64,000 bases of DNA, from positions 235,984 to 299,983 of the IMG/VR virus record IMGVR_UViG_3300046787_000408. One strand, given 5' to 3'. Below are positions 9,443 to 46,235 of the stretch, in pieces. The position numbers and the translations under genes are program-made. The notes beneath the pieces were generated by a model. That model searched no databases, was not told the DNA's origin, and saw only the letters and a program-made list of their open reading frames with translations. Position 1 is the stretch's first letter. Every line of letters begins with the position of its first letter.

Positions 9443-9443
9443 A

Positions 9444-11560: not shown

Positions 11561-11584
11561 TATCAACTCTTAGATAAATTCATT

Positions 11585-17549: not shown

Positions 17550-18272
17550 ATGAGAGACTGTCTTTTAGACTTGGTAGAGCACACTTTTGACCTTGGTTGT
17601 ATTGACCTTGTGAAGATTGTTGGCGACGACAAAACTACTCAAATCAGCGGCTTGGCCGAAGACTTGAGCGTGGTAGTGCAAGGCAACTACCACAACCCTG
17701 TAGCCGACTTTGTGGGCACATTTGGTATGCCCAACCTCAACAAGCTCAAGACCTTGTTGAACTTGCAGGAATATCGTGAGGACGCTAAATTGGCAATTAC
17801 TCATCGTAATCCCGGAGAGCCGGACGGTATCAACTTTGAAAACAAGCACGGCGATTTCAAGAACAACTATCGTTTTATGACGTCTAGTGTGGTAAGTGAA
17901 AAACTTAAAACTGCCAAGATGAAACCAGTGAACTGGCATATTGAGTTTGAACCCACAAACGCCAGCATTCAGCGACTGAAGTGGCAAATGAGTGCCAACG
18001 TTGAAGAACCAACTTTTCAAGTCAAGACTGAAGGCACTGACCTTAAGTTTTACTTTGGTGATCACTCAACGCATGCTGGTAACTTTGTGTTCCAAGCTGG
18101 GGTCACAGGTCAACTCAAACGTGCTTGGAGCTACCCAGCCAAGCAGTTTGCTAGCATCATGGATCTCAACGGTGACAAAGTGGTACGTATCAGTGACGAC
18201 GGTGCTGCTCAGATCACAGTAGATTCTGGTATTGCAGTGTACAACTACATCCTCCCAGCACAAAGCAAGTAA
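17550..18272 (+). CDS. Putative sliding clamp (gp45-like)
   Basis: 240 aa, beta-rich two-domain pattern, replication context; strong SD AGGAG. Confidence 0.5.
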   Translation: MRDCLLDLVEHTFDLGCIDLVKIVGDDKTTQISGLAEDLSVVVQGNYHNPVADFVGTFGMPNLNKLKTLLNLQEYREDAKLAITHRNPGEPDGINFENKHGDFKNNYRFMTSSVVSEKLKTAKMKPVNWHIEFEPTNASIQRLKWQMSANVEEPTFQVKTEGTDLKFYFGDHSTHAGNFVFQAGVTGQLKRAWSYPAKQFASIMDLNGDKVVRISDDGAAQITVDSGIAVYNYILPAQSK

Positions 18273-19912
18273 TGGCACAAGACAACCTAACGGCTAAACA
18301 AACAGGTACTGATGGCAGAAGTCAGTACGCTGTATTCTTGCCAGCTATTAGTGGTTTTTATGCTACATTTGTGGGCCGTCAAAGAAACGAACAGTATGTA
18401 GATCCTGCTCGTTTCCCCAAGGGTCTTACAGACATGGAACAGATGAATTGGCTTGATAGTCAAAAAGCTTTGTTTCCGTATCGTTGGAGTTTGTACTCAG
18501 GTGGTCATGCCAACTTGGATTTGGCCAAGCAAGACTGGAGTGAGGACATGGTTCGTAATCGCGAACCTGGCACCTTTATCTTGGGCGACTCTGGAGGATT
18601 CCAGATTGCCAAGGGCTTGTGGGAAGGCGACTGGAAAGCCAACTCAGGATGCCCCAAAGCACAAAAAAAGCGTGATGGTGTACTCAAGTGGTTGGATAAC
18701 ATTGCTGACTACGGCATGATCCTTGATATTCCTACCTGGGTTATTCACAGCAAAGAAGCCAGCAAAGCCTGCGGTATTACTACGCTACAAGAAGCAGTTG
18801 ATGCTACCAAGTTCAACAACGAGTACTTTATGAAACACCGTCGTGGTGTCAAGAATGGTGGTGCAAGATTCTTGAACGTGCTACAAGGCGACAATCATAC
18901 CAGTGCAGAAGATTGGTACCAGCTCATGAAGGACTACTGCGACCCTGTCAAGTATCCTGACACGCACTTTGACGGTTGGAGTATGGGTGGCCAGAACATG
19001 TGTGATGTTCACTTGGTACTAAAGCGCTTGGTAGCATTGCGTTACGACAACTTGTTACAAGAAGGCAAGCATGATTGGATGCACTTCTTGGGCACAAGTA
19101 AACTGGAGTGGGCAGTTCTACTCACAGTTATTCAGCGAGCTGTGAGAAAATATGTTAACCCTGCTTTTACTATCTCTTTTGATTGTGCTAGTCCATTCCT
19201 TGCAACGGCGAACGGGCAAGTCTATTTTGAAAACGTCTTTGAGAACGATTCTAAGTGGAGCTACAGAATGGCGCCGTCGGCAGACGACAAAAAGTACTCA
19301 ACAGACACCCGCAAGTGGTCGGACGGAGTAGTTCAAGACGGAATTTATCCACGCTGGGAAGACAGCCCTATTAGCGATATGCTAACAATGAAGGACATCT
19401 GTATCTACAAAGCTGGTACTCCCAAGCCAGGCGTTGTTATTACAGAAGAAAACTTCCGCGATCCCGAACTGTATGATGTGCTGCCAGATCAAAACAAAAA
19501 CGGTAAGTGGGGCAAAACATCATGGGACAGTTTCAGTTATGCATTGCTCATGGGCCACAACGTTTGGATGCATTTGACTGCGGTACAAGAAGCCAATCGT
19601 CGATTTGACGCAGGAGAGCGTCCGGCCATGATGCAGCGTGACGGTGGCGACTATGACAAGTTTGAAGACATTGTAGAAGCTATTTTTGCAGCACCAGATC
19701 GCGAAAGTGCAGAAGCCATAATTGAGCATTACGATTCATACTGGATGGAAATTGTGGGCACTCGTGGGTTCAAAGGTAAAAAAGCCAAGAATGCACGTAC
19801 TCAGTTTAATGCGTTATTTGATTTTGAAGAACCTGAGGTTGAACAATTAGTTGATGATAGTGTACAATTAGACAACAACAAACTTGATCAACTTGAGCAG
19901 GATCAGCAATGA
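18272..19912 (+). CDS. TGT-superfamily transglycosylase (DpdA-like)
   Basis: GDSGGFQ, NVLQG, MHFLG, ISFD motifs; clustered with folE/queD/queE. Confidence 0.75.
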   Translation: MAQDNLTAKQTGTDGRSQYAVFLPAISGFYATFVGRQRNEQYVDPARFPKGLTDMEQMNWLDSQKALFPYRWSLYSGGHANLDLAKQDWSEDMVRNREPGTFILGDSGGFQIAKGLWEGDWKANSGCPKAQKKRDGVLKWLDNIADYGMILDIPTWVIHSKEASKACGITTLQEAVDATKFNNEYFMKHRRGVKNGGARFLNVLQGDNHTSAEDWYQLMKDYCDPVKYPDTHFDGWSMGGQNMCDVHLVLKRLVALRYDNLLQEGKHDWMHFLGTSKLEWAVLLTVIQRAVRKYVNPAFTISFDCASPFLATANGQVYFENVFENDSKWSYRMAPSADDKKYSTDTRKWSDGVVQDGIYPRWEDSPISDMLTMKDICIYKAGTPKPGVVITEENFRDPELYDVLPDQNKNGKWGKTSWDSFSYALLMGHNVWMHLTAVQEANRRFDAGERPAMMQRDGGDYDKFEDIVEAIFAAPDRESAEAIIEHYDSYWMEIVGTRGFKGKKAKNARTQFNALFDFEEPEVEQLVDDSVQLDNNKLDQLEQDQQ

Positions 19913-20424
19913 ACAGAGAAGGCCACAGCAATGTTCAGTTCTTTACTGGAACTGAAGTAGAACGTACTCCAGCATTTGGAAAACAAACACTATTTGTGGT
20001 TGGCGTTCAACCAGTTGATGAAATTGCACATCACTTTGACATGAACCCTCGCGGGATTGAGCACATCTTTTTTGGTGCCAATCACAGCTTCTGTCCTGAT
20101 CCTGATGATCATACGGAGTGGCAGCGTTGGGAAAGAATGATCACGCACTTTCTTGAAAAAGGTTACATGTGCAGTCTGGACATTCCGGTCAAGTGCGTGG
20201 AAACATTCAATGAGACTGGCCTGTGCGAGTATCGCAACTTCATCCCACAAATTCGTGTAAGTATTCCTTACATACAACTGTGGAACTACAACACCATGAT
20301 CAAGCTGGACGACAGTGATTTTGACGCTACCAATCCTGGCGTTTGGACTCACAGTCTGCACAGCTTGATGTCAAGACGAACATTCACTGACTGGGATCAG
20401 TACAACGAGGACTCAACATTATGA
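19909..20424 (+). CDS. Hypothetical protein coupled to the TGT-like gene
   Basis: ATGA overlaps on both sides. Confidence 0.7.
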   Translation: MNREGHSNVQFFTGTEVERTPAFGKQTLFVVGVQPVDEIAHHFDMNPRGIEHIFFGANHSFCPDPDDHTEWQRWERMITHFLEKGYMCSLDIPVKCVETFNETGLCEYRNFIPQIRVSIPYIQLWNYNTMIKLDDSDFDATNPGVWTHSLHSLMSRRTFTDWDQYNEDSTL

Positions 20425-20870
20425 GCATGACTATAGTACAACGAGAAGACATGGAACGAATTATGGCCGCAGCAGAACGCAAAATCTGGGTCACGTTTCG
20501 CAAAGAAGGCATCCACTGCTACCCTGCAGCAGCTACTGATCCGGCACTGGCCACAGGTGACGAATACGATGTAAGCTTTCTTGGCACACCACATCGTCAT
20601 ATCTTTCACTTTCGTGTATGGATTGATGTGATCCACAACGATCGAGACATTGAGTTTATCCAGTTCAAGCGTTGGCTGGAGAATCTCTACAGAGACAGCA
20701 TTTTACAACTGGACTACAAAAGTTGCGAAATGATGGCAGATGATCTGTATCTACAGATTGCTGCAAAGTATCCAGACCGTGCGGTTTGGATTGAGGTAGC
20801 CGAAGATGGTGAAAACGGCGCTCTTATCAAATATGAAACTCACCGCCCCCAACTTAGTGTTAATATTTAA
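20421..20870 (+). CDS. QueD-like T-fold paralog (possible DpdL-type CDG decarboxylase)
   Basis: LGTPHRHIF replaces CxxxHGH; DRDIEF and SCEMMA motifs. Confidence 0.6.
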   Translation: MSMTIVQREDMERIMAAAERKIWVTFRKEGIHCYPAAATDPALATGDEYDVSFLGTPHRHIFHFRVWIDVIHNDRDIEFIQFKRWLENLYRDSILQLDYKSCEMMADDLYLQIAAKYPDRAVWIEVAEDGENGALIKYETHRPQLSVNI

Positions 20871-20879
20871 GGAAGTACC

Positions 20880-21107
20880 ATGGCAAAGCCAACATTCAAA
20901 TCCAATGCCCGTGTAAACGAGATCTTTGAAGACCTGGAAAAACTCTATGAGTTTTGCCAAGACTATGGATATCGCTACAACGAAAGCGATCTCTACAACT
21001 TCAAGAGCTATGCGTGGCAGCAGTTCAACAAGTACTCACAAGGCAAAAACGCCAAGAACATGTGGGACGAAGACACTCGACGCTTTGCAGGATATCGTCC
21101 ACAATGA
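20880..21107 (+). CDS. Hypothetical protein
   Basis: SD AAGGA; operonic. Confidence 0.65.
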   Translation: MAKPTFKSNARVNEIFEDLEKLYEFCQDYGYRYNESDLYNFKSYAWQQFNKYSQGKNAKNMWDEDTRRFAGYRPQ

Positions 21108-21520
21108 GTGCCGCTCGAGAAAAAGACCAAGCAGATTTTGATCTCGAGCGATTTGTGGACATGTTCGACGAAGCGCTGACCAGTAAAGATCCGCGTGTGG
21201 TAAATGCACTACGCAGTCTCATGATGATGGTCACGCTAACTAGACCCGAGTCGCGTGATTCAGGATTGCATGATCGCAACGCAGGTCCGTTGCGTAGACT
21301 GCATGAAGACATGAACCACTTGCACAGAAGGATTGAGCGCATGGAAGAACAGCTTAGTCGAGCAGAACGTAGTCAACGTCCAGAACAGATTGATCCTTAC
21401 AACTATCCCTACGAAAAATACACAATGGCAGCAGCACAAAAAATGTCTCAAGCTATTGATCAAGATGTGCTGAATAAACTCAAGGCCACGTACCGCGGCA
21501 AAATACAAGGACTTAAATGA
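21104..21520 (+). CDS. Hypothetical protein
   Basis: MSAAREKDQ start with ATGA overlap. Confidence 0.65.
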   Translation: MSAAREKDQADFDLERFVDMFDEALTSKDPRVVNALRSLMMMVTLTRPESRDSGLHDRNAGPLRRLHEDMNHLHRRIERMEEQLSRAERSQRPEQIDPYNYPYEKYTMAAAQKMSQAIDQDVLNKLKATYRGKIQGLK

Positions 21521-22731
21521 GAAAACTATTTTACATGGGCTTGGAAAGTTACGAAGCCCGATACACACTACAGCTTACTGAGTGGAATCGTCGTGTGTTT
21601 GATCGTCGTGGCTTGGATGTGGTTTATGTGCCTGGTACCACCATTGACAACACACAGGCTATCTCAGTGGGTCAAGTTCTGGACGCACATGGTCGCAGTT
21701 TCTTTGCCATGAGCCAAATGATGAACTTGGTTCAAATGATGAAGAACGGCGAAGTTACTGAGTCTGACGTTATCTACTTTGAAGACATGTTCCAGCCAGG
21801 CTTTGAAAGTCTTGGTTACATTTTGAACCAGATCCCGCCAGGCCATTGTCCTCGCATCTTTGTACGTTGTTTGGCACAGGCCATTGATCCTGATGACTTT
21901 GTACATGTTTGGGGACTGAACAAGTGGATGGATTTGTATGAAAAGATGGTTAACGAAATTGTCACGTTCAGTGGCGGCGGCGTCTTGGCTACCAACGAAG
22001 AAATGGTCGCGCACATGCGCATTGCTGGATGGACTGCTCCGATCTACAACATTTCAGGGTTGGCATTTGGAAAAGAGGAAGTTCTTGAGCGCATCGGAGG
22101 TAGTTCCCAAATCACACCGTTTGGTGACCGTCCAAGACGGGTGGGTTTCGCGGCTCGTTTTGATCAAGAAAAGCAGCCCGGCTTCTTTATGGACCTTATT
22201 GAAATGTATGGCGAGCTTACGACCGAACCCTGTGAGTTTGCGATATACTCGGGAGGCCCATTGCGCAGCAACAATCCGGCTTATATCGAGCGGGCTCGAC
22301 GCATGGAGAAAGAGGGCAAGCTCAAGATCTACGAAAATCTAAAGAAAGATGACTACTACGCCTTACTTAATGATACTCGTGTTTTGTTTAATTGCGCTCT
22401 TCAAGACTGGGTATCTAACACTGTATCCGAAGCCGACACTGTGGGGTGTAATGTTCTTTATCCTGCATATCGTAGTTTCCCTGAAACTTTTGCAAATGAC
22501 CCTAACCGCCTATATGTCCCTTGGAGCATAGATGACGCTTATCACAAGATGCAAAACTTATTGCGTGAACCACATCACAACATGGGACTTATTTCTGACT
22601 GGAACAATGGCACTGTTGACCGTGTTGTTGATATTGTTACCGGACAAGGTGAGCAGTGGAATCGTGCGGGCAACCGATATCGTGACCATGTTGCTCACGA
22701 AAAGTATCAAGTTGTAAAGATCGAAGAATAA
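21517..22731 (+). CDS. GT-B fold glycosyltransferase
   Basis: FAARFDQEKQP and LQDWVSNTVSEA, similar to the GT4 EX7E region. Confidence 0.75.
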   Translation: MRKLFYMGLESYEARYTLQLTEWNRRVFDRRGLDVVYVPGTTIDNTQAISVGQVLDAHGRSFFAMSQMMNLVQMMKNGEVTESDVIYFEDMFQPGFESLGYILNQIPPGHCPRIFVRCLAQAIDPDDFVHVWGLNKWMDLYEKMVNEIVTFSGGGVLATNEEMVAHMRIAGWTAPIYNISGLAFGKEEVLERIGGSSQITPFGDRPRRVGFAARFDQEKQPGFFMDLIEMYGELTTEPCEFAIYSGGPLRSNNPAYIERARRMEKEGKLKIYENLKKDDYYALLNDTRVLFNCALQDWVSNTVSEADTVGCNVLYPAYRSFPETFANDPNRLYVPWSIDDAYHKMQNLLREPHHNMGLISDWNNGTVDRVVDIVTGQGEQWNRAGNRYRDHVAHEKYQVVKIEE

Positions 22732-23579
22732 TGCAAGTCGAAGGCATCAAGTGGGCGCACATAGAAGCAAGTTCTAGATGCAACGCATGGTGCCCTGCAT
22801 GTCCAAGGAACAACAACGGATATGGCTTGGCCGACGGTGTAGTCGAACAAGACTTGTCTCCGGACAAGTTTGAAGAAATCATCAGTGGCCTGCCCAACTT
22901 GTACGGTGTTCAATTCTGCGGCAACTTTGGAGATCCTCTTGCTTCTGTTCACATTGACCAGTTGATAGATATCGCAAAAAAGTACGCTAAAAAAATACAA
23001 ATACATACCAACGGTAGCCTACGAAACGTTGACTGGTGGACTGGTCTAGCTCAGACTCTAGTAGATGTTGATCATGATGTTTGGTTTGGGATTGATGGGT
23101 TAGCAGGCGTACATGAGATATATCGTCAAGGTACTAGCTTTGAAAAGATTATTAAAAATGCGCAGGCATTTATTTCTGCTGGCGGATATGCAACTTGGCA
23201 GTTTATACCGTACAAGCACAACGAACACCAAGTGTCCCAGTGCTTAAAACTAAGCCAACAGATGAAGTTTAAAAAATTTCATCTAGCAAAATTGTACCGA
23301 CGCAAAACACTAGCAAGGCACTACAAAACAGGTCAAGAATTTGACTTGTTGCCCACTGACTCGATGAGATTGCTAATCAACATTGATCGTGTTAAACTAG
23401 CAGTTGAAGATAAAAATTGTATGCATTTGTCTATGCCAAGTGTGTATGTGTCGGCGGCAGGGAACATCAGCAGATGTTGCTACTTGTCCGATCAAGAACA
23501 GTTTGGTAGTGTAAGCCAGTTATTAGAAAATGTTAGCACTGATCTAACGGATAAAATATGTATTAGGAGTTGTGGATAA
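22731..23579 (+). CDS. Radical SAM protein
   Basis: CNAWCPAC; HTNGS; C-terminal Cys motifs. Confidence 0.85.
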   Translation: MQVEGIKWAHIEASSRCNAWCPACPRNNNGYGLADGVVEQDLSPDKFEEIISGLPNLYGVQFCGNFGDPLASVHIDQLIDIAKKYAKKIQIHTNGSLRNVDWWTGLAQTLVDVDHDVWFGIDGLAGVHEIYRQGTSFEKIIKNAQAFISAGGYATWQFIPYKHNEHQVSQCLKLSQQMKFKKFHLAKLYRRKTLARHYKTGQEFDLLPTDSMRLLINIDRVKLAVEDKNCMHLSMPSVYVSAAGNISRCCYLSDQEQFGSVSQLLENVSTDLTDKICIRSCG

Positions 23580-23580
23580 A

Positions 23581-24519
23581 ATGAATATAGTAGTTACAGG
23601 AGCCGCTGGATACATTGGCGGCCAAATTGCATTACAGTTACGAGACGCCGGATATTCAGTAACCGGCATTGATAGTAGACCTTTGCCTGCTCATCTTGAA
23701 GGTGTTATGAATTTCTTGCAAGCAGACTTTGCTAGTGATGAATCATTTCGTCGTCTTCTTGATTTGCGCCCTGAAGCTATTGTGCATTGTGCCGGCACTA
23801 GCTTGGTTGGGCCCAGCATCAAAAACCCCAGCGATTACTACAACAACAATGTGGTCAAGACCATACAACTGTTGGACATTGTGATTTCTGCTATGCCTCG
23901 AACTAGAATAATTTTTAGTTCCAGTGCCGCAGTGTACGGCGTTCCCTTTATGAATCCATGTCATGAAGTTGACCCAAAAGAGCCCATTAGTCCATACGGC
24001 GAAAGCAAGCTTATGGTAGAACAAGTGCTGGAAAGCTATCATCGTGCATACGGCCTGGATTATGTGGCCTTTCGTTACTTCAACGCCTGCGGTGCTGACT
24101 CACAAGGACGACACGGTCAAGAGCCCGGAGCCACACATATTATTGCTAGAGTTCTTGAAAGCATTCGGGACAATCAAGAGTTTGTGCTCAACGGCATTGA
24201 CTACCCTACTCCTGATGGTACCTGTATACGCGACTATGTGCATGTGGAAGATATTGCTCGAGCACATGTTATGGCTCTGAGCTCTGCTGTGGAAACAGGA
24301 GTTTACAATCTTGCATCCAGCACAGGAACCAGCAACCGAGAAGTTATTGACATTGCACAACAAGTTACTGGTAGTGCAGTAATTATTCGTGCAGGTGAAA
24401 AGCGAGCAGGTGATCCGCCAATGCTTACTGCCAGCGCAGACAAGTTTAACAAGCTGGGAGAGTGGCAACGCTACAAGTTGTCTGACATGATTCAACACGC
24501 ATGGAACTGGTATGTTTGA
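23581..24519 (+). CDS. galE: UDP-glucose 4-epimerase-like SDR
   Basis: VTGAAGYIG, FSSSAAVYG, YGESK, RYFNACG, DGTCIRDYVHV. Confidence 0.9.
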   Translation: MNIVVTGAAGYIGGQIALQLRDAGYSVTGIDSRPLPAHLEGVMNFLQADFASDESFRRLLDLRPEAIVHCAGTSLVGPSIKNPSDYYNNNVVKTIQLLDIVISAMPRTRIIFSSSAAVYGVPFMNPCHEVDPKEPISPYGESKLMVEQVLESYHRAYGLDYVAFRYFNACGADSQGRHGQEPGATHIIARVLESIRDNQEFVLNGIDYPTPDGTCIRDYVHVEDIARAHVMALSSAVETGVYNLASSTGTSNREVIDIAQQVTGSAVIIRAGEKRAGDPPMLTASADKFNKLGEWQRYKLSDMIQHAWNWYV

Positions 24520-25099
24520 TAAAATTCTAAAGTTTGAACAGGCCCTAGCAGAGTTTACAGGTGCGCCATATGCAATCATGACTGATTGCTGTACCCACGC
24601 TATTGAACTGTGCTTGAGGCACGACCGTGTGCGCGAAGTTGTGATGACTCCTTACACCTACTTGAGTATTCCTATGACCATGCACAAGTTAGGCATCAAG
24701 TACTACTATCGTGAAGAAGACTGGACCGGCGAATACCAGTTCCATGGTACTAGAATCTGGGACAGTGCCCGACGTCTTGAAAAGAACATGTATCGTTCTG
24801 GACAGATGCAGTGCCTGAGTTTTGGGCACACCAAACCCTTGCATATTGGGCGCGGTGGCGCTATCTTGTTGGATGACTCACGAGCATACGACACCATGAT
24901 TCGTCAACGATATGATGGTCGCGACCTAAATATATCACCATGGCAAGAACAGCACACATTCCAAATTGGGTATCACTACAAGCCCACACTGGAAGAAGCC
25001 GTGCAAGGGCTTGCCTTGCTAGAAGGTATCAAGGAAACCAATCCTGTACCCATACATGTACAGTATCCAGATTTACGCAAGATAACCATTACTGCTTGA
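24512..25099 (+). CDS. Short DegT/DnrJ-family PLP aminotransferase-like protein
   Basis: CCTHAIEL, WDSAR, SFGHTKPLHIGRGG. Confidence 0.7.
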   Translation: MFDKILKFEQALAEFTGAPYAIMTDCCTHAIELCLRHDRVREVVMTPYTYLSIPMTMHKLGIKYYYREEDWTGEYQFHGTRIWDSARRLEKNMYRSGQMQCLSFGHTKPLHIGRGGAILLDDSRAYDTMIRQRYDGRDLNISPWQEQHTFQIGYHYKPTLEEAVQGLALLEGIKETNPVPIHVQYPDLRKITITA

Positions 25100-25166
25100 C
25101 TTTGCGATCTAAATACATTACAATTAACAAAAAAGCAATCCACTGCTTCAACATCGGAGAACCATA

Positions 25167-25985
25167 TTGACAAAAGAATTCGTACCAGATAAAATTTTGC
25201 ACGCCAGCGCAGAATTTGTCCCAGATCCAGTTATAACCCAAGCACAACCAGCCCCAGGAAAAAAATTGACACAGTTACATTATAGAGAAGAAGACGGTAG
25301 ACCACTTAGCCAAGTTATCCGTGATAGACTCAAACAAGACAACAAACGTTTTTGGGCTGGCGACAACATTAGCGAATACATTAGCGATGTTGAAAAAGAT
25401 ACCTTGATTGGCGAAGCTACAGCAGCATTTGAAAAAGTCTTGGACACCCTACTGATTGACAGAGAAAATGATCCCAATAGCAAGGGCACGGCGCGGCGAC
25501 TGGCCAAGATGTACTACAATGAAATCATGTCTGGTCGATATGAGGCGAGCCCTAATGCTACGGCTTTCCCGAACGACACAGATGGAGCGTACGACGGCAT
25601 GTTGGTTGTACGCTCTGAGCTTAAGAGCATGTGCTCGCATCATCACCAGCCTGTTACGGGTGTTGCTTATATTGGAATCATTGCTGGGCCTAAACTCATT
25701 GGTCTTAGCAAGTACACTCGCATCGCGCAGTGGTGTGCCCGTCGGGGTACTCTCCAGGAAGAGCTATGTATGGATATTGCTAGGGAAATCGAATTTGCTA
25801 CCGGCTCAAGGGATGTGGCTGTTTATATCCAAGCTACCCACGGATGCTGTGAGAATCGCGGTATTATGGCACACTCTAGTCTCACGCAAACTACAGTGCT
25901 AAGAGGCGCTTTCAAAGAAGATCAAAGTGTCAAGAAAGAATTCTTTGACAACATCAAACTGCAACAGGACTTTGCACCACGATGA
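25167..25985 (+). CDS. folE: GTP cyclohydrolase I
   Basis: SMCSHHHQP, IGLSKYTRI, LQEEL, HGCCENRG. Confidence 0.93.
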   Translation: MTKEFVPDKILHASAEFVPDPVITQAQPAPGKKLTQLHYREEDGRPLSQVIRDRLKQDNKRFWAGDNISEYISDVEKDTLIGEATAAFEKVLDTLLIDRENDPNSKGTARRLAKMYYNEIMSGRYEASPNATAFPNDTDGAYDGMLVVRSELKSMCSHHHQPVTGVAYIGIIAGPKLIGLSKYTRIAQWCARRGTLQEELCMDIAREIEFATGSRDVAVYIQATHGCCENRGIMAHSSLTQTTVLRGAFKEDQSVKKEFFDNIKLQQDFAPR

Positions 25986-26377
25986 ACGATCTAGAACAAG
26001 CATATCATGACAAAGTTGCTCCTTGGGATTTAAAGGTTGATGACCTTAGTGATTTTCATGTGACTGTGTTCCAAGATCGATTTCCTGTTGCAGTAGGGCA
26101 CTTGTTGTTTGTGCCTAATTTTAATACCCGCACAGTGATAGTTGATGCTTTTGAATCTGCACTAGCACATGGTAATCGCCTAGTAGCCGCAGGAGAATGT
26201 GATGCCTTCAACGTTGGTATCAACATGGGTGCTGCTGCTGGTCAAACTGTGATGTACCCACATGTGCATTTGATCCCAAGAAAACACGGCGACTGTGCGG
26301 ATCCCGTAGGTGGAGTGCGTGGAGTAATTTTTGGGCAAGCCAACTACAAGAAATCTGGCTATCAACAGCCAGTATAA
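25982..26377 (+). CDS. HIT family hydrolase
   Basis: AGQTVMYPHVHLIPR. Confidence 0.88.
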   Translation: MNDLEQAYHDKVAPWDLKVDDLSDFHVTVFQDRFPVAVGHLLFVPNFNTRTVIVDAFESALAHGNRLVAAGECDAFNVGINMGAAAGQTVMYPHVHLIPRKHGDCADPVGGVRGVIFGQANYKKSGYQQPV

Positions 26378-26462
26378 GTAATATTCTCAGCGGCCTTTAC
26401 GGCATTCATCCCGCTATACAAATTCTGCAAGCCTATGCTATAATCTAACATAGGAGAACACC

Positions 26463-26987
26463 ATGGCAAAATATCTATCAACAAAAACATACGGTAACGA
26501 TCGAGGTCTAAGCTGTTGCTTTAGACAGTGGCGCAGTAAGCACAGCCACTGCTCGTTGCTACACGGATACAGTATCGGTATCAAACTTGTATTTGAATCA
26601 GAAACACTAGACGACCGTAACTGGGTCATGGACTTTGGTGGCCTCAAGGCATTCAAAGAGTGGAGCGAATGGCAGTTTGATCATACCACTGTGATTGGAT
26701 CTGATGATCCACATCTGGCAAAGTTTAAAGAACTAGCCAAGTTGGGCAAACAAGCAGAGGGTGGTGTTCTGGATCTGCGTATTGTAGAAGCTGTGGGCTG
26801 TGAGAAGTTTGCCGAACTGGCATATCGCACCATGCAAGAAATTCTAGAAGCCTATCAACAAGGTCGAGGTTGGACACACCCTGATGGACGTGTGTTTGAA
26901 GCTCGTTATCCTGTGGGCGCTGGCGTTAGATTGCGTAGTGTGGAAGTATTTGAACACGCTGGAAACTCAGCTACTTACGAAGGATAA
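26463..26987 (+). CDS. queD: 6-carboxy-tetrahydropterin synthase
   Basis: CSLLHGY, VMDFG, FDH, GCEKFA. Confidence 0.85.
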   Translation: MAKYLSTKTYGNDRGLSCCFRQWRSKHSHCSLLHGYSIGIKLVFESETLDDRNWVMDFGGLKAFKEWSEWQFDHTTVIGSDDPHLAKFKELAKLGKQAEGGVLDLRIVEAVGCEKFAELAYRTMQEILEAYQQGRGWTHPDGRVFEARYPVGAGVRLRSVEVFEHAGNSATYEG

Positions 26988-26990
26988 TGA

Positions 26991-27845
26991 ATGAGCGAAA
27001 CTACTACACCTGAATTTGACATTGCTATCTTGTTGCCCACTCGCGGGCGATCAGATTCACTTGAACGCAGTATCAAAAGCGTTATTGAACTAGCATCTGA
27101 TGCTAGTCGTGTGCAGTTGATGTTTGGGTTTGACAACGATGACCCAGTGGGTATTACTCACTTTGTACAAGAACTGCAACCCTGGCTGGATCAGCAAAAT
27201 GTTAACTACACTGCTATCAAGTTTCCGCCTTTGGGTTACATTCGACTCAACGAATATGTTAACGAACTAGCTCGCAAGAGCGATGCACGTTGGTTGGTAT
27301 TCTGGAACGACGATGCTGTAATGGAGACTCAAGGCTGGGACTCCAAGATCATGGAGTGGGAAGGCAAGTTCAAGTTGCTGGCCTTTCATACTCACAACGA
27401 TCATCCGTATAGTATTTTCCCTATTGTGCCTCGCAAGTGGTTGGATCTGTTGGGGTACTTGAGTCCGCATCAAATCTCTGACGCTTGGCTGAGTCAGCAG
27501 GCGTATATGCTAAACATTTGGCAGCGTATTGAAGTTGATGTATTGCACGATCGGCATGACCTTACTGGCAACAACAATGACGAAACATTCCAAAATCGTC
27601 CCATGTTGGAAGGAAATCCTGCCAACCCCAAGGACTTTCACAGCATGACACAGATGGACATTCGTCACCGAGACTGTCATAAAATTGCCGAGTATTTGAG
27701 AACACAAGGTATTGACTTGACATTTTTTGATCAAGTGTTCCGCGGTGAACAAGATCCCTGGGAACACCTTGCCAAGAATGATGTAAACCGTCAAATGATG
27801 CAGTTTAAAAATCCGCATACACATTTCCAAACAGGTGCCAAATGA
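26991..27845 (+). CDS. GT-A (GT2-like) glycosyltransferase
   Basis: ILLPTRGR; FWNDD. Confidence 0.75.
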   Translation: MSETTTPEFDIAILLPTRGRSDSLERSIKSVIELASDASRVQLMFGFDNDDPVGITHFVQELQPWLDQQNVNYTAIKFPPLGYIRLNEYVNELARKSDARWLVFWNDDAVMETQGWDSKIMEWEGKFKLLAFHTHNDHPYSIFPIVPRKWLDLLGYLSPHQISDAWLSQQAYMLNIWQRIEVDVLHDRHDLTGNNNDETFQNRPMLEGNPANPKDFHSMTQMDIRHRDCHKIAEYLRTQGIDLTFFDQVFRGEQDPWEHLAKNDVNRQMMQFKNPHTHFQTGAK

Positions 27846-28630
27846 CACACATGACTCTTGAAGAACGTATCAAAAAATACTGGAATACACAACCATGTAA
27901 CATCAAGCACGGTCAAAGTGATATTGGCACAACAGAGTTCTTTCGCGAAGTAAGTGAACGCAGATATCGTGTTGAGCCGCACATTGCTGAGTTTGCTGGT
28001 TTCCATTTGTGGGCTGGTAAACGTGTGCTGGAAATTGGTTGCGGCATTGGTAGTGATGCTGAAGAGTTTGCCAAACACGGTGCTGAATATGTGGGTATTG
28101 ATCTGTCAGATCAGAGTATCGCACTAAGTCAGCAAAGGTTTGAAACACTAGGGCTTGAAGGTGAGTTTCATAATGTTGATGCAACAGATGCTGCCGCTCT
28201 AGCCAAACTAGGCGAGTTTGACCTTGTGTACAGTTATGGTGTTATCCATCACTTTCCTGGCATTGACAAAATCATCAGCAATGTGCAAGCAGTTATCAAA
28301 CCAGGTGGCGAGTTCCGTTATATGGTGTATGCCAAGAACTCTTGGAAGTATGCTATGATCCAAAAGGGTCTGGACCAATTTGAAGCACAAGCTGGTTGTC
28401 CGTATGCACAAGCGTTCTCCAAAGATGAAATACATCAACTGATGAACGAGCAAAACGGTTGGCACATTGAGAGGTTGCGTCAGGACCACTGTTTCATGTA
28501 TAATGTAGACTCGTACAAGGCAGGACGCTATGAGTTAGAACCGTGGTTTGAGGCCATGAGTGAATCACATCGTCAAGCTGTTAGAGAATATCTAGGTTGG
28601 CATCTTTTAGTTAAAGCAAAGAAATTATGA
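27842..28630 (+). CDS. Class I SAM-dependent methyltransferase
   Basis: VLEIGCGIG, FDLVYSYGVIHH, IKPGG. Confidence 0.9.
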   Translation: MTHMTLEERIKKYWNTQPCNIKHGQSDIGTTEFFREVSERRYRVEPHIAEFAGFHLWAGKRVLEIGCGIGSDAEEFAKHGAEYVGIDLSDQSIALSQQRFETLGLEGEFHNVDATDAAALAKLGEFDLVYSYGVIHHFPGIDKIISNVQAVIKPGGEFRYMVYAKNSWKYAMIQKGLDQFEAQAGCPYAQAFSKDEIHQLMNEQNGWHIERLRQDHCFMYNVDSYKAGRYELEPWFEAMSESHRQAVREYLGWHLLVKAKKL

Positions 28631-29472
28631 AATTCAAAGTATCAGAACTGTTCTACTCAGCACAAGGCGAAGGCCGTTATGTAGGCGTTCCTAGTGTGTT
28701 CCTTCGCATGTTTGGCTGTAACTTTACCTGCTCTGGGTTTGGCTGCAAGCCTGGTGAAAAAAGCACAGGAGCAGATGAAGTAGCCAAGACTGTGGAACTG
28801 TACAAAACGTTTGAAGAATTGCCATTGGTGAGCACAGGATGTGACAGCTATGCAAGTTGGCATCCAGCCTTCAAACACTTGAGCCCAAGCTATACTGCTG
28901 AACAACTAGTGGACAAAATGGCTGCATTACTGCCACACGGTAACTGGTTGCAACCTAATGGGAACCCAGTACACTTGGTTATCACAGGCGGCGAACCACT
29001 ACTGGGCTGGCAACGAGCATATCCTGAACTGCTGGACTTGTTGCATGCACGTGGCTTACGACACATCACATTTGAGACCAACGGTACTCAGGAACTGTCA
29101 AGAGAGTTTAGAACATATCTAGACGACTGGCATGGTGAAATTACATTTAGTGTCAGTCCCAAGTTAAGTGTCAGTGGCGAAAAACGTGAAGACGCTATTC
29201 GTCCAGAAATTGTGTTTGACTATGAAACACATGGTATCACATATCTAAAGTTTGTGGTAGACAAGATTGCAGACTTTGACGAATTGGATCAAGCAGTAGA
29301 TGAATATCGACTGGCTGGATTTGCTGGTCCTGTGTTTGTGATGCCAGTAGGCGGTGTGGTTAGTGTGTATGATGGTAACAGAATTCATGTTGCAGACGAA
29401 GCACTCAAGCGCGGTTACTGGTATACTCCAAGATTGCATGTGGATCTTTGGGGTAATGGCTGGGGGAAATAA
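28627..29472 (+). CDS. queE: 7-carboxy-7-deazaguanine synthase
   Basis: SAQGEG, FLRMFGCNFTC, CDS, ITGGEP, FETNGT, SVSPK, PRLH. Confidence 0.88.
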   Translation: MKFKVSELFYSAQGEGRYVGVPSVFLRMFGCNFTCSGFGCKPGEKSTGADEVAKTVELYKTFEELPLVSTGCDSYASWHPAFKHLSPSYTAEQLVDKMAALLPHGNWLQPNGNPVHLVITGGEPLLGWQRAYPELLDLLHARGLRHITFETNGTQELSREFRTYLDDWHGEITFSVSPKLSVSGEKREDAIRPEIVFDYETHGITYLKFVVDKIADFDELDQAVDEYRLAGFAGPVFVMPVGGVVSVYDGNRIHVADEALKRGYWYTPRLHVDLWGNGWGK

Positions 29473-29895
29473 ATGTTTGATCGAATCAAAAGTTTGTTTG
29501 GCAAAAATGCCAATGTGAATCCACCTCCCACACAATCAAGGCCTGTACCACCGCCTCCACCACCACCAAAGCCAAGGCCCAAGGCTCCTGAAAAGTCAGC
29601 CAAAGAACTAGCTACCGAACGTGGCGAGCCTTATGTAGCAGTACTCAGCATGGACGTGGATCCGGATAATCTGCACCAAGGGGCATTTGAGCTGGACTGG
29701 AACGAAAAGTTCGTGGCCAACTTGATTAGAGCTGGATACCAAGGTAAAACAGACAATGACGTGGTGGACCAGTGGTTCCAGAACGTGTGCAGGCACGTGG
29801 TAATGGAAACATGGGAGCAGGAGCAAGCTATCAAGAATTCCGGCATTTATGTACAGAGTCGCAACATTGGCGACGGAAGAAGCGAAGTATCATGA
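29473..29895 (+). CDS. Hypothetical phage protein
   Basis: Pro-rich N-terminus; FELDWN motif. Confidence 0.7.
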   Translation: MFDRIKSLFGKNANVNPPPTQSRPVPPPPPPPKPRPKAPEKSAKELATERGEPYVAVLSMDVDPDNLHQGAFELDWNEKFVANLIRAGYQGKTDNDVVDQWFQNVCRHVVMETWEQEQAIKNSGIYVQSRNIGDGRSEVS

Positions 29896-30383
29896 TTTTC
29901 AATCACATCAAAGAACTCAAAGCCCAAGGCAAACGTATTGGCATCACATTCAGTCAATTTGACATGCTGCATGCTGGGCACATTGCCATGTTGGCCGAAG
30001 CCAAGAACCACTGCGATTATCTTATTGCAGGTTTACAAACTGACGCCAGCATTGACCGTCCAGGTGTTAAAAATGCTCCTGTGCAAAGCATTGTGGAGCG
30101 ACAGATACAACTCAGTGCCTGCAGATTTGTAGACGAGATTGTGGTGTACACCACAGAGCGAGACTTGGTTGACTTGATTTTAACCTTGCCCATTGATGTA
30201 CGCATCCTGGGCCAAGAGTACGAAGACACCAACTTTACCGGACGCAACGAAGGCTCTGGACTGGGTATAGAGCATGTGTTCAACAGCAGAGATCATTCGT
30301 TCTCCAGCAGTAGTTTGCGTAAACGTGCGGCGGCTGCTGAAGCTGAAAAGGAACAGTTGAATGGAATCACTAAAGCCTCCTAA
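29892..30383 (+). CDS. Cytidylyltransferase (TagD-like)
   Basis: FDMLHAGH, CDYLIAGL, SSSSLR. Confidence 0.85.
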   Translation: MIFNHIKELKAQGKRIGITFSQFDMLHAGHIAMLAEAKNHCDYLIAGLQTDASIDRPGVKNAPVQSIVERQIQLSACRFVDEIVVYTTERDLVDLILTLPIDVRILGQEYEDTNFTGRNEGSGLGIEHVFNSRDHSFSSSSLRKRAAAAEAEKEQLNGITKAS

Positions 30384-30603: not shown

Positions 30604-31275
30604 ATGAACATACTTTTCAACGGCGACTCCAACATGAGTGGAGAAGAATTAGACAATCGTGATCAATGCATGGCTGGTGTTATAGCCAGCCACTTTGGTG
30701 CTACTGCTACAAACATTGCAGTGAGTGGAGCCAGCAATGACTTGATATACAACAGCACCTTGGATTACATACACAATAATCCTGCGCCGGATCTTGTGGT
30801 AATTGGGTGGACTGAACATGGTCGTGAGCAATGGTACTTTGACGGTGAGTTTCACGAGATCAATCAACTGGACGTAGGACAACGTATTCCTGAGCAGTTT
30901 CGTCGCAGATATCAGTTCTGGAAAAATCACATTCAGAAAGAAGGCGAGTGGCACCGTGTGATGGGTTACTACTGGCACAACAAGATCTACAACTTGCACT
31001 TGATGCTGCAAGAGAAACAGATACCACACTTGTTTTTCAATGCGTTCAATGCATTTCAAGTCGAGAACCCAGCTGAATGGTTGCCTTGGCAGGATTGTTT
31101 TTTCCGTCCTTACCATCAAAACCTTTGTTATGTGAACTGGTGTAGCGAACGTGGCTTCAACGAAATCACTCCCGGGTGGCAACACTATGATGAAGCAGCC
31201 CATGCCGCATGGGGCAATACCATGATTGATTACATGAACAACCATCCTGCTTATGATACTATATGTAAACGGTGA
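30604..31275 (+). CDS. SGNH-hydrolase-like protein
   Basis: FNGDS, AVSGASN, C-terminal H..E.AH. Confidence 0.6.
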   Translation: MNILFNGDSNMSGEELDNRDQCMAGVIASHFGATATNIAVSGASNDLIYNSTLDYIHNNPAPDLVVIGWTEHGREQWYFDGEFHEINQLDVGQRIPEQFRRRYQFWKNHIQKEGEWHRVMGYYWHNKIYNLHLMLQEKQIPHLFFNAFNAFQVENPAEWLPWQDCFFRPYHQNLCYVNWCSERGFNEITPGWQHYDEAAHAAWGNTMIDYMNNHPAYDTICKR

Positions 31276-46148: not shown

Positions 46149-46153
46149 AACAT

Positions 46154-46228: not shown

Positions 46229-46235
46229 CTATAGT

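What the first reader, a model, noticed from the sequence alone, without database searches (positions are those of the whole stretch)
18272..29472. 7-deazaguanine DNA-modification pathway with no QueC in view but a second QueD-like protein and a linked glycosyltransferase
Seen: TGT-like, FolE, QueD, QueE and a T-fold paralog with LxxxHRHxF next to the DNA polymerase. Established: FolE-QueD-QueE make CDG, and QueC is needed for preQ0. From memory, DpdL-type QueD paralogs are proposed to decarboxylate CDG. Inference: the DNA carries CDG or unsubstituted 7-deazaguanine, possibly further modified by the GT-B enzyme at 21517. The 546-aa TGT-like protein is long and may be a distinct subfamily.
Basis: partly seen in the sequence, partly recalled or inferred. 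Interest (0 to 1): 0.6.

Follow-up and report, generated by a model that had tools for sequence, protein, structure and literature searches.

The report
QueC-less 7-deazaguanine DNA-modification cluster with sugar genes
A freshwater jumbo phage carries, next to its DNA polymerase, the genes to make a 7-deazaguanine base without the nitrile-forming enzyme QueC and to swap it into its DNA, plus a glycosyltransferase found only alongside this pathway in seven phage lineages, which hints at an undescribed sugar-bearing guanine replacement.

Summary
On the + strand, right after a family-B DNA polymerase, lie:
- a 546-aa protein with a TGT/DpdA fold (18272-19912)
- a DpdL-family T-fold protein with the exact LxxxHRHxF motif (20421-20870)
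- a GT4-like GT-B glycosyltransferase (21517-22731)
- FolE, QueD and QueE

No QueC, QueF or canonical TGT was found in the 300-kb record. A 95%-complete relative also lacks QueC.

The gene set matches the published dDG route of Cellulophaga phage phiST (FolE-QueD-QueE-DpdL-DpdA, no QueC).

Three things are new:
- **Transglycosylase family.** The 546-aa enzyme belongs to a large unclassified ~540-aa family (907 clusters; PA5oct, Phosso, Vibrio 2.275.O). Its nearest known relative is DpdA2, not DpdA3.
- **Glycosyltransferase link.** The GT occurs only in DpdL-positive phages (seven lineages). It is absent from the four DpdL-negative deazaguanine phages tested.
- **Sugar genes.** All are interleaved with the que genes, and all but the last two hold the same order across the relatives.

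Best reading: post-replicative replacement of G by 7-deazaguanine, probably then glycosylated. The chemistry is untested, and a tRNA role is not excluded because the window carries 38 tRNA genes.

The parts
13917..16580 (+). Family-B DNA polymerase. Context only: the module starts two genes downstream.
   Evidence: Pfam DNA_pol_B 4e-36 and DNA_pol_B_exo1 2e-20. About 50% identical to the PA5oct and Phosso polymerases.
18272..19912 (+). Long (546 aa) DpdA-like guanine transglycosylase, the predicted DNA base-exchange enzyme.
   Evidence: AF2 pLDDT 91. Foldseek to TGT, E 4.5e-7. VIA Z 15.3-16.9 to ArcTGT, QTRT2, TGT and DpdA. Invariant D106 (DSGGFQ) and D304 (FDC, equivalent to the Z. mobilis D280 nucleophile), near-invariant D152. 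No conserved CxCxxC Zn site. 907 clusters at 50% identity.
19909..20424 (+). 171-aa accessory protein of unknown function. Weakly QueE-like fold, but no radical-SAM cysteine motif.
   Evidence: Found in 76 of the 80 relatives' loci. Homologue directly upstream of the ACP17 dpdA (tblastn 8e-12; hhalign 98.5%). AF2 pLDDT 78. Best fold matches are weak: PDB QueE Z 5.2-6.1, Atlas QueE clusters TM 0.57. No Foldseek match.
20421..20870 (+). DpdL-family T-fold protein (QueD paralog), the proposed CDG decarboxylase.
   Evidence: Motif L54-GTP-H58-R-H60-I-F. tblastn to ACP17 DpdL 56%, 7e-38, and to phiST DpdL 34%, 3e-9. Aligns with DpdLs and apart from QueDs. Family defined in PMC10516641.
21517..22731 (+). 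GT4-like GT-B glycosyltransferase co-inherited with DpdL.
   Evidence: Weak Pfam Glyco_trans_1_2 hit. Atlas neighbours carry Glycos_transf_1. Profile to PDB GT4 enzymes, 4e-4. Homologues near DpdL in PA5oct (1e-15), ACP17 (9e-12), Phosso (1e-7), BUCT-ZZ01 (65% identity), BUDD and BCSR5.
22731..23579 (+). Radical-SAM protein (SPASM/twitch-maturase-like). A variable accessory gene.
   Evidence: Pfam Radical_SAM 6.7e-6. phrog_21308 2.9e-26. Matched in only 13 of 80 relatives' loci; where placed, only L051 has it at this position, the others upstream on the opposite strand.
23572..24519 (+). GalE, UDP-glucose 4-epimerase.
   Evidence: NCBIfam TIGR01179 galE 293 bits, above the 262 cut-off. PDB UDP-glucose 4-epimerases down to 3e-73. 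Lies directly or closely downstream of the GT in most of the relatives mapped.
24512..25099 (+). Compact (195 aa) DegT/DnrJ/EryC1-like PLP enzyme, not a pseudogene.
   Evidence: Pfam DegT 8.5e-17. The SFGHTK lysine motif is kept. Full-length coverage in 46 relatives' loci. Homologues of the same size lie in glycosylation islands of Synechococcus phage S-SCSM2R and Flavobacterium phage immuto_2-6A.
25167..25985 (+). FolE, GTP cyclohydrolase I, with an ~85-aa N-terminal extension.
   Evidence: Pfam GTP_cyclohydroI 1.1e-39, 136 bits. NCBIfam FolE models 4e-40.
25982..26377 (+). HIT-family protein. The histidine motif reads HVHLI.
   Evidence: Pfam HIT 6.4e-9. NCBIfam HinT and ATP adenylyltransferase, weak. 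Sequence.
26463..26987 (+). QueD / 6-carboxytetrahydropterin synthase of the phage type (CxxxHGY).
   Evidence: Pfam PTPS 1e-13. 42% and 37% identical by tblastn to the QueDs of BUCT-ZZ01 and phiST. All share CxxxHGY in place of CxxxHGH.
26991..27845 (+). GT-A-like glycosyltransferase (second GT).
   Evidence: phrog_14945 glycosyltransferase 2.7e-13. The IxLPTRGR and WNDD motifs in the sequence were compared with GT-A signatures from memory only. Only isolate homologue is a GT of Pelagibacter phage HTVC008M.
27842..28630 (+). Class-I SAM methyltransferase. By fold family it is not DpdM.
   Evidence: Pfam Methyltransf_12/23/25, about 1e-19. phrog_22502 4e-60.
28627..29472 (+). QueE, 7-carboxy-7-deazaguanine synthase (radical SAM).
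   Evidence: phrog_2076 QueE-like 6e-54. Five NCBIfam QueE models at 1e-11 to 4e-14, all below their cut-offs. 44% identical to the BUCT-ZZ01 QueE.
29772..30383 (+). Sugar-phosphate nucleotidyltransferase-like protein (RfaE domain II type). Membership in the module is uncertain.
   Evidence: Pfam CTP_transf_like 1.7e-9. TIGR02199 1.3e-21, below cut-off. phrog_7878 1e-27.

Best explanation
This is a phage DNA guanine-replacement module of the QueC-less (dDG) type with an added sugar branch.

Proposed steps:
1. FolE, QueD and QueE convert GTP to 7-carboxy-7-deazaguanine (CDG). This follows from homology to established enzymes.
2. The DpdL paralog removes the carboxyl group to give 7-deazaguanine. 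This role is proposed in the literature and has not been shown biochemically.
3. The 546-aa TGT-fold enzyme exchanges genomic G for this base after replication. This is inferred from its fold, its catalytic aspartates, its position beside the polymerase, and the behaviour of related phages.
4. The GT4-like GT-B then attaches a sugar to the inserted base, or to its free precursor. GalE just downstream suggests the donor is UDP-Gal or a related sugar.
5. In this clade the short DegT-like PLP enzyme, the HIT protein, the GT-A and the methyltransferase tailor or extend that sugar.

Steps 4 and 5 rest on co-occurrence only. Rough odds: core steps 1-3, about 0.75-0.8; sugar on the deazaguanine, about 0.3-0.35.
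For: - Gene identities.
- The TGT/DpdA fold stands clearly apart from other TIM barrels. The residues matching Z. mobilis D102, D156, Q203, the GG pair and D280 are conserved across 83 diverse family members.
- DpdL identity.
- No QueC, QueF, Pfam TGT or ThyA-type hydroxymethylase in the record. No QueC in a 95%-complete relative.
- phiST has the same core set and carries dDG in place of all G (PMC10516641).
- PA5oct has the same long enzyme, GT and DpdL. Its DNA resists G-containing restriction enzymes and is attacked by nucleases that sense modified G (PMC12191111).
- All 12 isolate records with a tblastn GT hit are DpdL-positive. A profile search adds ACP17, Phosso and BCSR5, which are also DpdL-positive. 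The GT is absent from nt-1, 9g, CP220 and 2.275.O, which use QueC.
- The order DpdA-like, P0002, DpdL, GT, GalE, DegT-like, FolE, HIT, QueD, GT-A is kept in the relatives whose loci span it, down to 79% DpdA-like identity; the MTase is seen in only 7 loci.
Against: - There are no chemical data for this phage or any close relative.
- DpdL activity has never been demonstrated. ACP17 DpdL plus DpdA gave no dDG in E. coli.
- Plain 7-deazaguanine offers no obvious hydroxyl or amine for O- or N-glycosylation in the major groove, so the acceptor atom is unknown.
- The short DegT-like gene, radical-SAM genes and GTs also occur in phage glycosylation islands with no known link to DNA.
- The record is 81% complete.
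- An uncharacterised PP-loop ATPase lies at 49034-50179.
- The window carries its own GUN-anticodon tRNAs, so tRNA is a conceivable substrate.
Confidence: 0.6

Rival explanations
1. The DNA ends at plain dDG (or dCDG). The GT-B and the other sugar genes glycosylate something else, such as virion proteins or a host surface polymer, and are only co-located with early replication genes.
For: Homologues of the short DegT-like protein lie beside radical-SAM, GT-A, methyltransferase or epimerase genes in glycosylation islands of S-SCSM2R and immuto_2-6A, with no que genes in the windows fetched. phiST reaches 100% dDG without any GT. The radical-SAM gene is variable among relatives and the MTase was seen in few loci.
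Against: The GT-B itself, unlike the tailoring genes, lies beside DpdL or a DpdA-like gene in seven otherwise unrelated lineages. It was never found in a DpdL-negative phage. No ThyA-type hydroxymethylase is present to provide another DNA acceptor.
Confidence: 0.3
2. The TGT-like enzyme acts on tRNA, either the phage's own GUN-anticodon tRNAs or the host's, inserting a 7-deazaguanine at position 34. DNA is not modified.
For: The window encodes 38 tRNAs, including Asp-GTC (x2), Tyr-GTA, Asn-GTT (x2) and His-GTG, the queuosine-family substrates. Structurally the enzyme is as close to tRNA TGTs as to DpdA: Z 16.6-16.9 against 15.3.
Against: The three-cysteine Zn motif of tRNA TGTs is not conserved. 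The gene sits among replication genes. PA5oct, with the orthologous enzyme, has restriction-resistant DNA. phiST and other DpdL/DpdA phages carry the base in DNA. nt-1 DpdA2, the nearest characterised subfamily, inserts preQ0 into DNA in E. coli. Bacterial tRNA TGT uses preQ1, which this phage cannot make.
Confidence: 0.07
3. QueC chemistry is supplied after all, by the host QueC, by the unsequenced ~19% of the genome, or by the unclassified PP-loop ATPase at 49034-50179. The inserted base would then be preQ0, ADG or a derivative.
For: The record is 81% complete. The 381-aa ORF has an SGGSDS PP-loop and no assignable family. VH7D DpdA2 accepts several 7-deazaguanines. Vibrio phage 2.275.O pairs the same long enzyme family with QueC and QueF.
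Against: A 95%-complete relative has no QueC. No DpdL-positive isolate searched has a full QueC: D479 has only a partial hit and BUDD a sub-threshold one. The PP-loop ORF scores nothing against the QueC model (no hit at E <= 1, none listed at E <= 1). It lies inside the tRNA gene region and has a faint ThiI-like match, which fits a tRNA-modifying role. It has no homologue in any isolate phage.
Confidence: 0.1

Closest known systems
dDG pathway of Cellulophaga phage phiST (FolE, QueD, QueE, DpdL, DpdA3; Cui, Hutinet et al., NAR 2023, PMC10516641)
   Same: Same logic and the same core genes: no QueC; a QueD paralog with LxxxHRHxF; a QueD of the CxxxHGY type; and a divergent TGT-like enzyme beside replication genes.
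   Different: The transglycosylase here is 546 aa against 259 aa, and related only at hhalign 86.7% over 82 columns. phiST has no GT-B, GalE or other sugar genes. It has a P-loop ATPase and a MazG instead.
PA5oct-like Pseudomonas jumbo phages (Arenbergviridae) and Sinorhizobium phage Phosso
   Same: Orthologous long DpdA-like enzyme (32% and 29% identity, full length), GT-B, DpdL, QueE, PolB and RNase H. PA5oct keeps them all in the same order; in Phosso the long enzyme lies elsewhere in the genome. PA5oct DNA behaves as G-modified.
   Different: PA5oct lacks GalE, the DegT-like gene, HIT, the GT-A and the MTase in the module. It has a short SDR-like protein and a phosphoribosyltransferase there instead. 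Its DpdL reads HFH, not HRH. The modification is chemically unidentified in both.
DpdA2 transglycosylases (Vibrio phage nt-1 and VH7D; also the enzymes of ACP17, BUCT-ZZ01 and Xanthomonas BUDD)
   Same: Nearest characterised subfamily by profile and by structure: hhalign 94.5-97% over the catalytic core; BFVD nt-1 3e-8. nt-1 and VH7D DpdA2 insert 7-deazaguanines into DNA in E. coli.
   Different: No BLAST-level similarity. Roughly 90-130 residues longer than these enzymes. The ACP17, BUCT-ZZ01 and BUDD enzymes are 34-39% identical to nt-1 DpdA2, whereas the long family forms its own group with PA5oct, Phosso and 2.275.O.
Bacterial tRNA-guanine transglycosylase (Z. mobilis TGT) and bacterial DpdA (PDB 7ui4)
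   Same: TIM-barrel fold. The DSGGFQ, LDxP, LQG, GW(A/S)xGG and FDC motifs align with the TGT active site.
   Different: Below the Pfam TGT threshold. The CxCxxC part of the Zn site is lost and only the His (H429) is kept. There are large insertions and an acidic, disordered C-terminal tail.
T4 alpha- and beta-glucosyltransferases (sugar on 5-hydroxymethylcytosine in DNA)
   Same: From general knowledge, these are GT-B-fold phage enzymes that decorate an already modified DNA base using a UDP-sugar. This is the working analogy for the GT here.
   Different: No sequence relationship was detected. Here the partner base would be a purine analogue, no ThyA-type hydroxymethylase is present, and the acceptor atom is unknown.

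Membership tests
TGT/DpdA superfamily | TGT-type (beta/alpha)8 barrel | tested here: met
   AF2 pLDDT 91. Foldseek top 49 rows are all TGT, E ~5e-7 to 3e-6, prob 1.0. VIA Z 14.8-16.9 for ArcTGT, QTRT2, TGT, DpdA and Cap10, against <= 11.8 for other barrels.
TGT/DpdA superfamily | Catalytic aspartates and the guanine-pocket motifs (Z. mobilis D102, D156, Q203, G229/G230, D280) | tested here: met
   D106 and D304 are invariant; D152 99%, Q205 83%, G235 96% in 83 sequences. The Z. mobilis numbering comes from general knowledge.
TGT/DpdA superfamily | Zn site CxCxxC...H | tested here: not met
   No conserved cysteine cluster. Only H429 (87%) aligns with the TGT His ligand region.
TGT/DpdA superfamily | Score above the Pfam PF01702 gathering threshold | tested here: not met
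   No hit for the protein. 2 of 83 family members hit, at a best E of 0.043. No hit in the genome.
DpdA (DNA-acting) | Exchanges G in DNA for a 7-deazaguanine | not testable with these tools
   Indirect only: position beside PolB, and the restriction resistance of PA5oct DNA.
DpdA2 subfamily | Clear sequence kinship with nt-1/VH7D DpdA2 | tested here: inconclusive
   hhalign 94.5%, E 8e-8 over 173 columns, with no BLAST hit. By contrast the ACP17, BUCT-ZZ01 and BUDD enzymes hit nt-1 at 1e-41 to 1e-49. The HMM of the long family hits the nt-1 gene at 1.9e-5.
DpdA3 subfamily | Kinship with phiST CGPG_00065 / CP220 DpdA3 | tested here: not met
   hhalign 86.7% over 82 columns only. The family HMM finds nothing in phiST or CP220. 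BFVD phiST 4.7e-3.
DpdA4 subfamily | Kinship with HVTV-1 gp69 (DUF6610) | not tested
   The accession I fetched turned out to be HGTV-1, not HVTV-1. No family member hit DUF6610 in the Pfam scan.
DpdL | QueD-like T-fold with LxxxHRHxF in place of CxxxHGH | tested here: met
   L54 GTP H58 R H60 I F62. Aligned with six other DpdLs.
DpdL | Homology to the named DpdLs of phiST and ACP17 | tested here: met
   tblastn 7e-38 (ACP17) and 3e-9 (phiST).
DpdL | Found with DpdA, FolE, QueD and QueE but without QueC | tested here: met
DpdL | CDG decarboxylase activity | not testable with these tools
   Also unproven for the family itself.
QueD (CPH4 synthase) | PTPS fold family above threshold; signature CxxxHGH | tested here: inconclusive
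   Pfam PTPS 51.7 bits against 22.4. TIGR03367 is below its cut-off. The signature reads CxxxHGY, as in the QueDs of phiST, ACP17 and BUCT-ZZ01.
QueE (CDG synthase) | Radical-SAM QueE family; cluster-binding cysteines | tested here: inconclusive
   phrog_2076 6e-54 over the full length. NCBIfam QueE equivalogs score 42-53 bits, all below their cut-offs. The cysteines read C31xxxC35, then C40 and C72, which is not a plain CxxxCxxC.
GalE | Score above the TIGR01179 equivalog cut-off | tested here: met
   293.1 bits against 262.3. PDB epimerases at 3e-73.
GT-B / GT4-like glycosyltransferase | Glycos_transf_1-type C-terminal domain | tested here: inconclusive
   Pfam 19 bits against 25. The profile of six homologues hits PDB group-1 GTs at 4e-4. 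Atlas neighbours carry PF00534.
QueC | Any ORF above the PF06508 threshold in the genome | tested here: not met
   The best hit is NadE at 15.7 bits against 22. The PP-loop ORF at 49034-50179 does not match QueC.

The most novel reading that the evidence does not exclude
In this freshwater jumbo-phage clade, and in PA5oct-like, ACP17, Phosso, BUCT-ZZ01, Xanthomonas X1/BUDD and Burkholderia BCSR5 phages, the DpdL product is only an intermediate. The conserved GT-B would attach a sugar to the 7-deazaguanine, for example by C-glycosylation at the electron-rich C7 or at N2. In this clade the sugar would be galactose-derived and further aminated, methylated or extended. As far as I know from memory and from my literature searches, no sugar-bearing purine replacement in DNA has been described. 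A newly recognised long DpdA subfamily would insert the base.
Probability: 0.3. Interest if true: 0.85.

Novelty: new variant of a known kind. Interest (0 to 1): 0.62.

Why it matters
7-Deazaguanine replacement is a major way for phages to escape restriction. It also affects sequencing and phage-therapy design.

- **Abundance.** The QueC-less branch is much more widespread than the few isolates suggest. More than 7,300 close homologues of the transglycosylase were found, many on contigs of up to ~360 kb, and the runs that hold this sequence are lake and other freshwater metagenomes.
- **Enzyme family.** This branch uses a transglycosylase family that current Pfam and PHROG models miss.
- **Failed reconstitution.** The strict GT-DpdL linkage offers a concrete reason why DpdL plus DpdA alone did not yield dDG in E. 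coli: partner genes (the GT, and the P0002/ASD50402 protein) were left out.
- **Testability.** The linkage predicts a new class of DNA base, and this can be checked directly in culturable phages (PA5oct, ACP17, BUCT-ZZ01).

Tried and rejected
- **Nucleotide search.** Megablast of the region against isolate phages found nothing.
- **Direct family and PDB-sequence searches for the 546-aa protein** found nothing. A profile against PDB gave only E ~1.4 to TGT, so the fold had to be modelled.
- **P0002.** No Pfam, PHROG or NCBIfam hit and no Atlas feature hit. The PDB profile hits to designed 'Cake' propellers are repeat artefacts. Foldseek found nothing and VIA gave Z <= 6.2. It is unrelated to the PRTase, SDR or other small neighbours in the other phages. 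It is not homologous to the gene between DpdA and DpdL in PA5oct or ACP17; that gene turned out to be the GT.
- **Weak QueC-profile hits.** These are NadE, or ~400-aa PP-loop proteins of relatives. The one homologue in the window (49034-50179) is not QueC-like.
- **DegT-like 195-aa ORF as a pseudogene.** Rejected: it is full length and conserved in 46 loci, and it keeps the PLP lysine.
- **ThyA-type hydroxymethylase as an alternative GT acceptor route.** Absent.
- **Phosphoribosyltransferase in this genome,** as seen in PA5oct and BUCT-ZZ01: absent.
- **Sequencing runs.** Only Logan contigs from freshwater metagenomes were on offer, with no raw or nanopore reads and no RNA holder. Read laying was therefore not used, and neither expression nor modification signal could be assessed.
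- **Paper supplements.** The supplementary tables of PMC10516641 are not held. I could not check whether PA5oct-type enzymes were already listed under a DpdA subfamily there.
- **DpdA4.** Not compared, because the accession fetched was the wrong virus.
- **Complex prediction.** Not used: no binding claim is made.

Full report
**Where the window lies**

The window is the last 64 kb of a 299,983-bp IMG/VR virus record that CheckV rates 81% complete. GC content is even at about 45%. Nearly all large ORFs between 13.9 and 33 kb are on the + strand and abut or overlap. The two public runs that hold most of the sequence are freshwater metagenomes; the others, mostly lake, freshwater or aquatic, hold only small shares of it. 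The polymerase, clamp-like protein, RNase H and the 546-aa protein are most similar to those of the Pseudomonas jumbo phage PA5oct and the 469-kb Sinorhizobium phage Phosso.

**Check of the observation**

- FolE, 25167-25985: Pfam 1.1e-39.
- PTPS/QueD protein, 26463-26987: 1e-13.
- Family-B polymerase, 13917-16580.
- QueE, 28627-29472: matches the phage QueE family phrog_2076 at 6e-54 over its whole length. It stays under the NCBIfam equivalog cut-offs.
- The 149-aa protein at 20421-20870 carries L-GTP-HRH-I-F. This is the LxxxHRHxF signature that defines DpdL in Cui, Hutinet et al. (PMC10516641).
- That protein also hits the two DpdLs named in the paper: ACP17 at 56% and 7e-38, phiST at 34% and 3e-9. 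In a joint alignment it groups with DpdLs, apart from QueDs.

**The 546-aa protein**

- The word search found more than 7,300 homologues, all unnamed.
- The exhaustive search found 907 clusters at 50% identity.
- An AF2 model built on 83 diverse members has pLDDT 91.
- Foldseek ranks tRNA-guanine transglycosylases first, at E 4.5e-7 and prob 1.0.
- An independent aligner gives Z 16.9 (ArcTGT), 16.7 (QTRT2), 16.6 (Z. mobilis TGT), 15.3 (DpdA, 7ui4) and 14.8 (Cap10). There is a clear gap to unrelated TIM barrels, which reach at most 11.8.
- Invariant or near-invariant residues fall on the TGT active-site motifs: DSGGFQ (D106), LDxP (D152), LQG (Q205), GW(A/S)xGG, and FDC (D304, the position of the Z. 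mobilis nucleophile D280).
- The cysteine part of the TGT zinc site is not conserved. Only H429 remains.

**Which DpdA subfamily?**

- BLAST groups the window protein with PA5oct (32%), Phosso (29%) and Vibrio phage 2.275.O. It does not group with any named DpdA.
- Profile comparison gives 97% probability to the ACP17 enzyme, 95.9% to Xanthomonas BUDD, 94.8% to BUCT-ZZ01 and 94.5% to nt-1 DpdA2. Each covers only the catalytic core.
- To phiST DpdA3 it gives 86.7% over 82 columns.
- The ACP17, BUDD and BUCT-ZZ01 enzymes are ordinary DpdA2 relatives, 34-39% identical to nt-1.
- The family HMM finds nothing in 9g (DpdA1), CP220 or phiST (DpdA3). The BFVD ranking agrees.

I therefore treat the ~540-aa proteins as a separate branch whose nearest characterised relatives are DpdA2. 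I could not see the paper's supplementary lists, so I cannot say whether the branch was already counted under a published subfamily. In 2.275.O the same long enzyme sits with QueF, QueC, a YhhQ-like transporter and FolE. The family is therefore not tied to one substrate.

**Absence of QueC**

- The QueC model finds only a 15.7-bit hit in the record. That hit is a NadE NAD synthase: Pfam NAD_synthase 1e-51.
- A 331-kb relative rated 95% complete shows the same single NadE hit.
- QueF, Pfam TGT, ThyA-type enzymes and phosphoribosyltransferases are also absent from the record.
- In a whole-record search of 16 isolate phages, no DpdL-positive genome has a full QueC. D479 has only a partial hit and BUDD a sub-threshold one. 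2.275.O, nt-1, 9g and CP220 all have QueC.
- One caveat remains: a 381-aa PP-loop ATPase (SGGSDS) at 49034-50179. It does not match QueC, has only a faint ThiI-like score, has no isolate homologue, and lies inside the tRNA gene region. I read it as a probable tRNA-modifying enzyme.

**The glycosyltransferase**

The 404-aa protein at 21517-22731 is a GT4-like GT-B. Its link to DpdL is the main new result.
- It is homologous to the unnamed gene between the DpdA-like gene and DpdL in PA5oct (1e-15) and in ACP17 (9e-12).
- It is homologous to the GT next to DpdL in Phosso (1e-7).
- It is 65% identical to the gene adjacent to DpdL in the T4-like cyanophage BUCT-ZZ01.
- It matches the gene beside the DpdA and DpdL genes in Xanthomonas BUDD.
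- All 12 isolate records hit by tblastn are DpdL-positive.
- A six-sequence profile also finds it in Burkholderia BCSR5 (4e-76), beside a DpdA-like gene and about 2.7 kb from DpdL.
- It is absent from DpdL-positive phiST, RHph_I1_18, Bakedbeans, Ahp1, D479 and MA9V-3, and from all four DpdL-negative deazaguanine phages.
- It accompanies both the DpdA2-type and the long-type transglycosylases.

This pattern fits an optional step downstream of DpdL. The family shares a conserved N-terminal E..E.RYT motif and the usual GT4 C-terminal residues.

Between the GT and QueE lie, in order:
- A radical-SAM protein. It matched in 13 of 80 relatives' loci, and where placed it usually lies elsewhere.
- A genuine GalE: TIGR01179 at 293 bits against a cut-off of 262.
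- A 195-aa DegT-like protein. It keeps the PLP lysine and is full length in 46 relatives' loci, so it is not a fragment.
- FolE.
- A HIT protein.
- QueD.
- A GT-A-like protein.
- A class-I methyltransferase.

A sugar-phosphate nucleotidyltransferase-like gene follows QueE. The order DpdA-like, P0002, DpdL, GT, GalE, DegT-like, FolE, HIT, QueD, GT-A is kept, with small variable insertions, in the relatives whose loci span it, down to 79% DpdA-like identity; the MTase is seen in only 7 loci.

The short DegT-like gene also occurs in glycosylation islands of Synechococcus phage S-SCSM2R and Flavobacterium phage immuto_2-6A, with no que genes in the windows fetched. For these tailoring genes, then, a role unrelated to DNA cannot be dismissed.

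**The 171-aa protein P0002 (19909-20424)**

It is present in 76 of the 80 relatives' loci. It has a homologue directly upstream of the ACP17 dpdA. Its model has pLDDT 78. The only recurring structural neighbours are QueE proteins, at weak scores: PDB Z 5.2-6.1 and Atlas TM 0.57. It has no radical-SAM cysteine motif. I record it as an unexplained accessory, possibly a deazapurine-binding domain.

**Mechanism**

Steps resting on homology to established enzymes: GTP goes to H2NTP (FolE), then CPH4 (QueD), then CDG (QueE).

Steps inferred:
- CDG goes to 7-deazaguanine through DpdL. The literature proposes this but has not shown it.
- The long DpdA-like enzyme exchanges the base into DNA after replication. 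Support comes from the fold, the catalytic residues, the position next to the polymerase, dDG in phiST, and the G-linked restriction resistance and END-nuclease sensitivity of PA5oct.

Step that is speculative but testable: a GT-mediated sugar on the base, with GalE supplying the donor and the other enzymes tailoring it.

The window also carries 38 tRNA genes, including all GUN-anticodon tRNAs. This keeps a tRNA target formally open, but I rate it low.

**Comparison and novelty**

The core is the known dDG-type pathway, so the finding is not categorically new. Three things differ from anything described in the papers I could search:
- the long transglycosylase family
- the strict GT-DpdL association across seven lineages
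- the embedded nucleotide-sugar genes

I rate it a new variant of a known kind.

Noticed in passing
window 46074-61298 (+): An array of 38 tRNA genes covering most amino acids. It includes Asp-GTC x2, Tyr-GTA, Asn-GTT x2 and His-GTG, the queuosine-family anticodons, plus three CAT tRNAs and an Ile-TAT.
   Followed up: partly
window 49034-50179 (+): A 381-aa PP-loop ATPase (SGGSDS) with no Pfam or PHROG family and no homologue in isolate phages. It has a 29%-identical relative in another contig of the clade. It sits inside the tRNA region and is possibly a TilS/ThiI-like tRNA modifier.
   Followed up: partly
G000:C1:189845-190672 (locus L001 1423-2250), outside the window: The phage encodes a NadE NAD synthase (Pfam 1e-51). 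It is conserved at 70-78% identity in relatives.
   Followed up: partly
window 21517-22731 vs Synechococcus phage BUCT-ZZ01 65689-66855: The GT is 65% identical to that of a T4-like freshwater cyanophage, while the neighbouring DpdL is only 38% identical. This suggests recent exchange of the GT between unrelated phage families.
   Followed up: no
L002 10190-10624 (PA5oct EST35_0321); L092 4093-4554 (BUCT-ZZ01): A small phosphoribosyltransferase sits next to QueE in two other DpdL-GT modules, but is absent from this genome. It hints that a nucleotide form of the base may matter in some lineages.
   Followed up: partly
window 26463-26987 and the QueDs of phiST, ACP17 and BUCT-ZZ01: The QueDs of DpdL phages share FRQ(W/P)...HCxxxHGY instead of the canonical CxxxHGH. 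One of the expected zinc histidines is therefore replaced by tyrosine.
   Followed up: no
L112 (Logan contig, 23.5 kb), 4705-11574: A 517-aa member of the long DpdA-like family lies in what looks like a bacterial integrative element: an integrase, a PTPS gene and a possible radical-SAM gene, next to GntR and oxidoreductase genes. The family is therefore not confined to lytic jumbo phages.
   Followed up: no
window 30604-31275 and 31253-31981 (+): Two adjacent paralog-like ORFs with weak DUF6071 matches lie between the module and the RNase H gene. Function unknown.
   Followed up: no
window 28627-29472 (QueE): The radical-SAM cysteines read C31xxxC35 followed by C40 and, 36 residues after C35, GC72DSY. 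This looks like a long insertion inside the cluster-binding motif.
   Followed up: no
L100 (Vibrio phage 2.275.O) 5899-12925: There the long DpdA-like enzyme (596 aa) is clustered with QueF, a YhhQ-like transporter, QueC, a glutamine amidotransferase-like protein and FolE. That is a complete preQ1-type route with the same transglycosylase family.
   Followed up: partly
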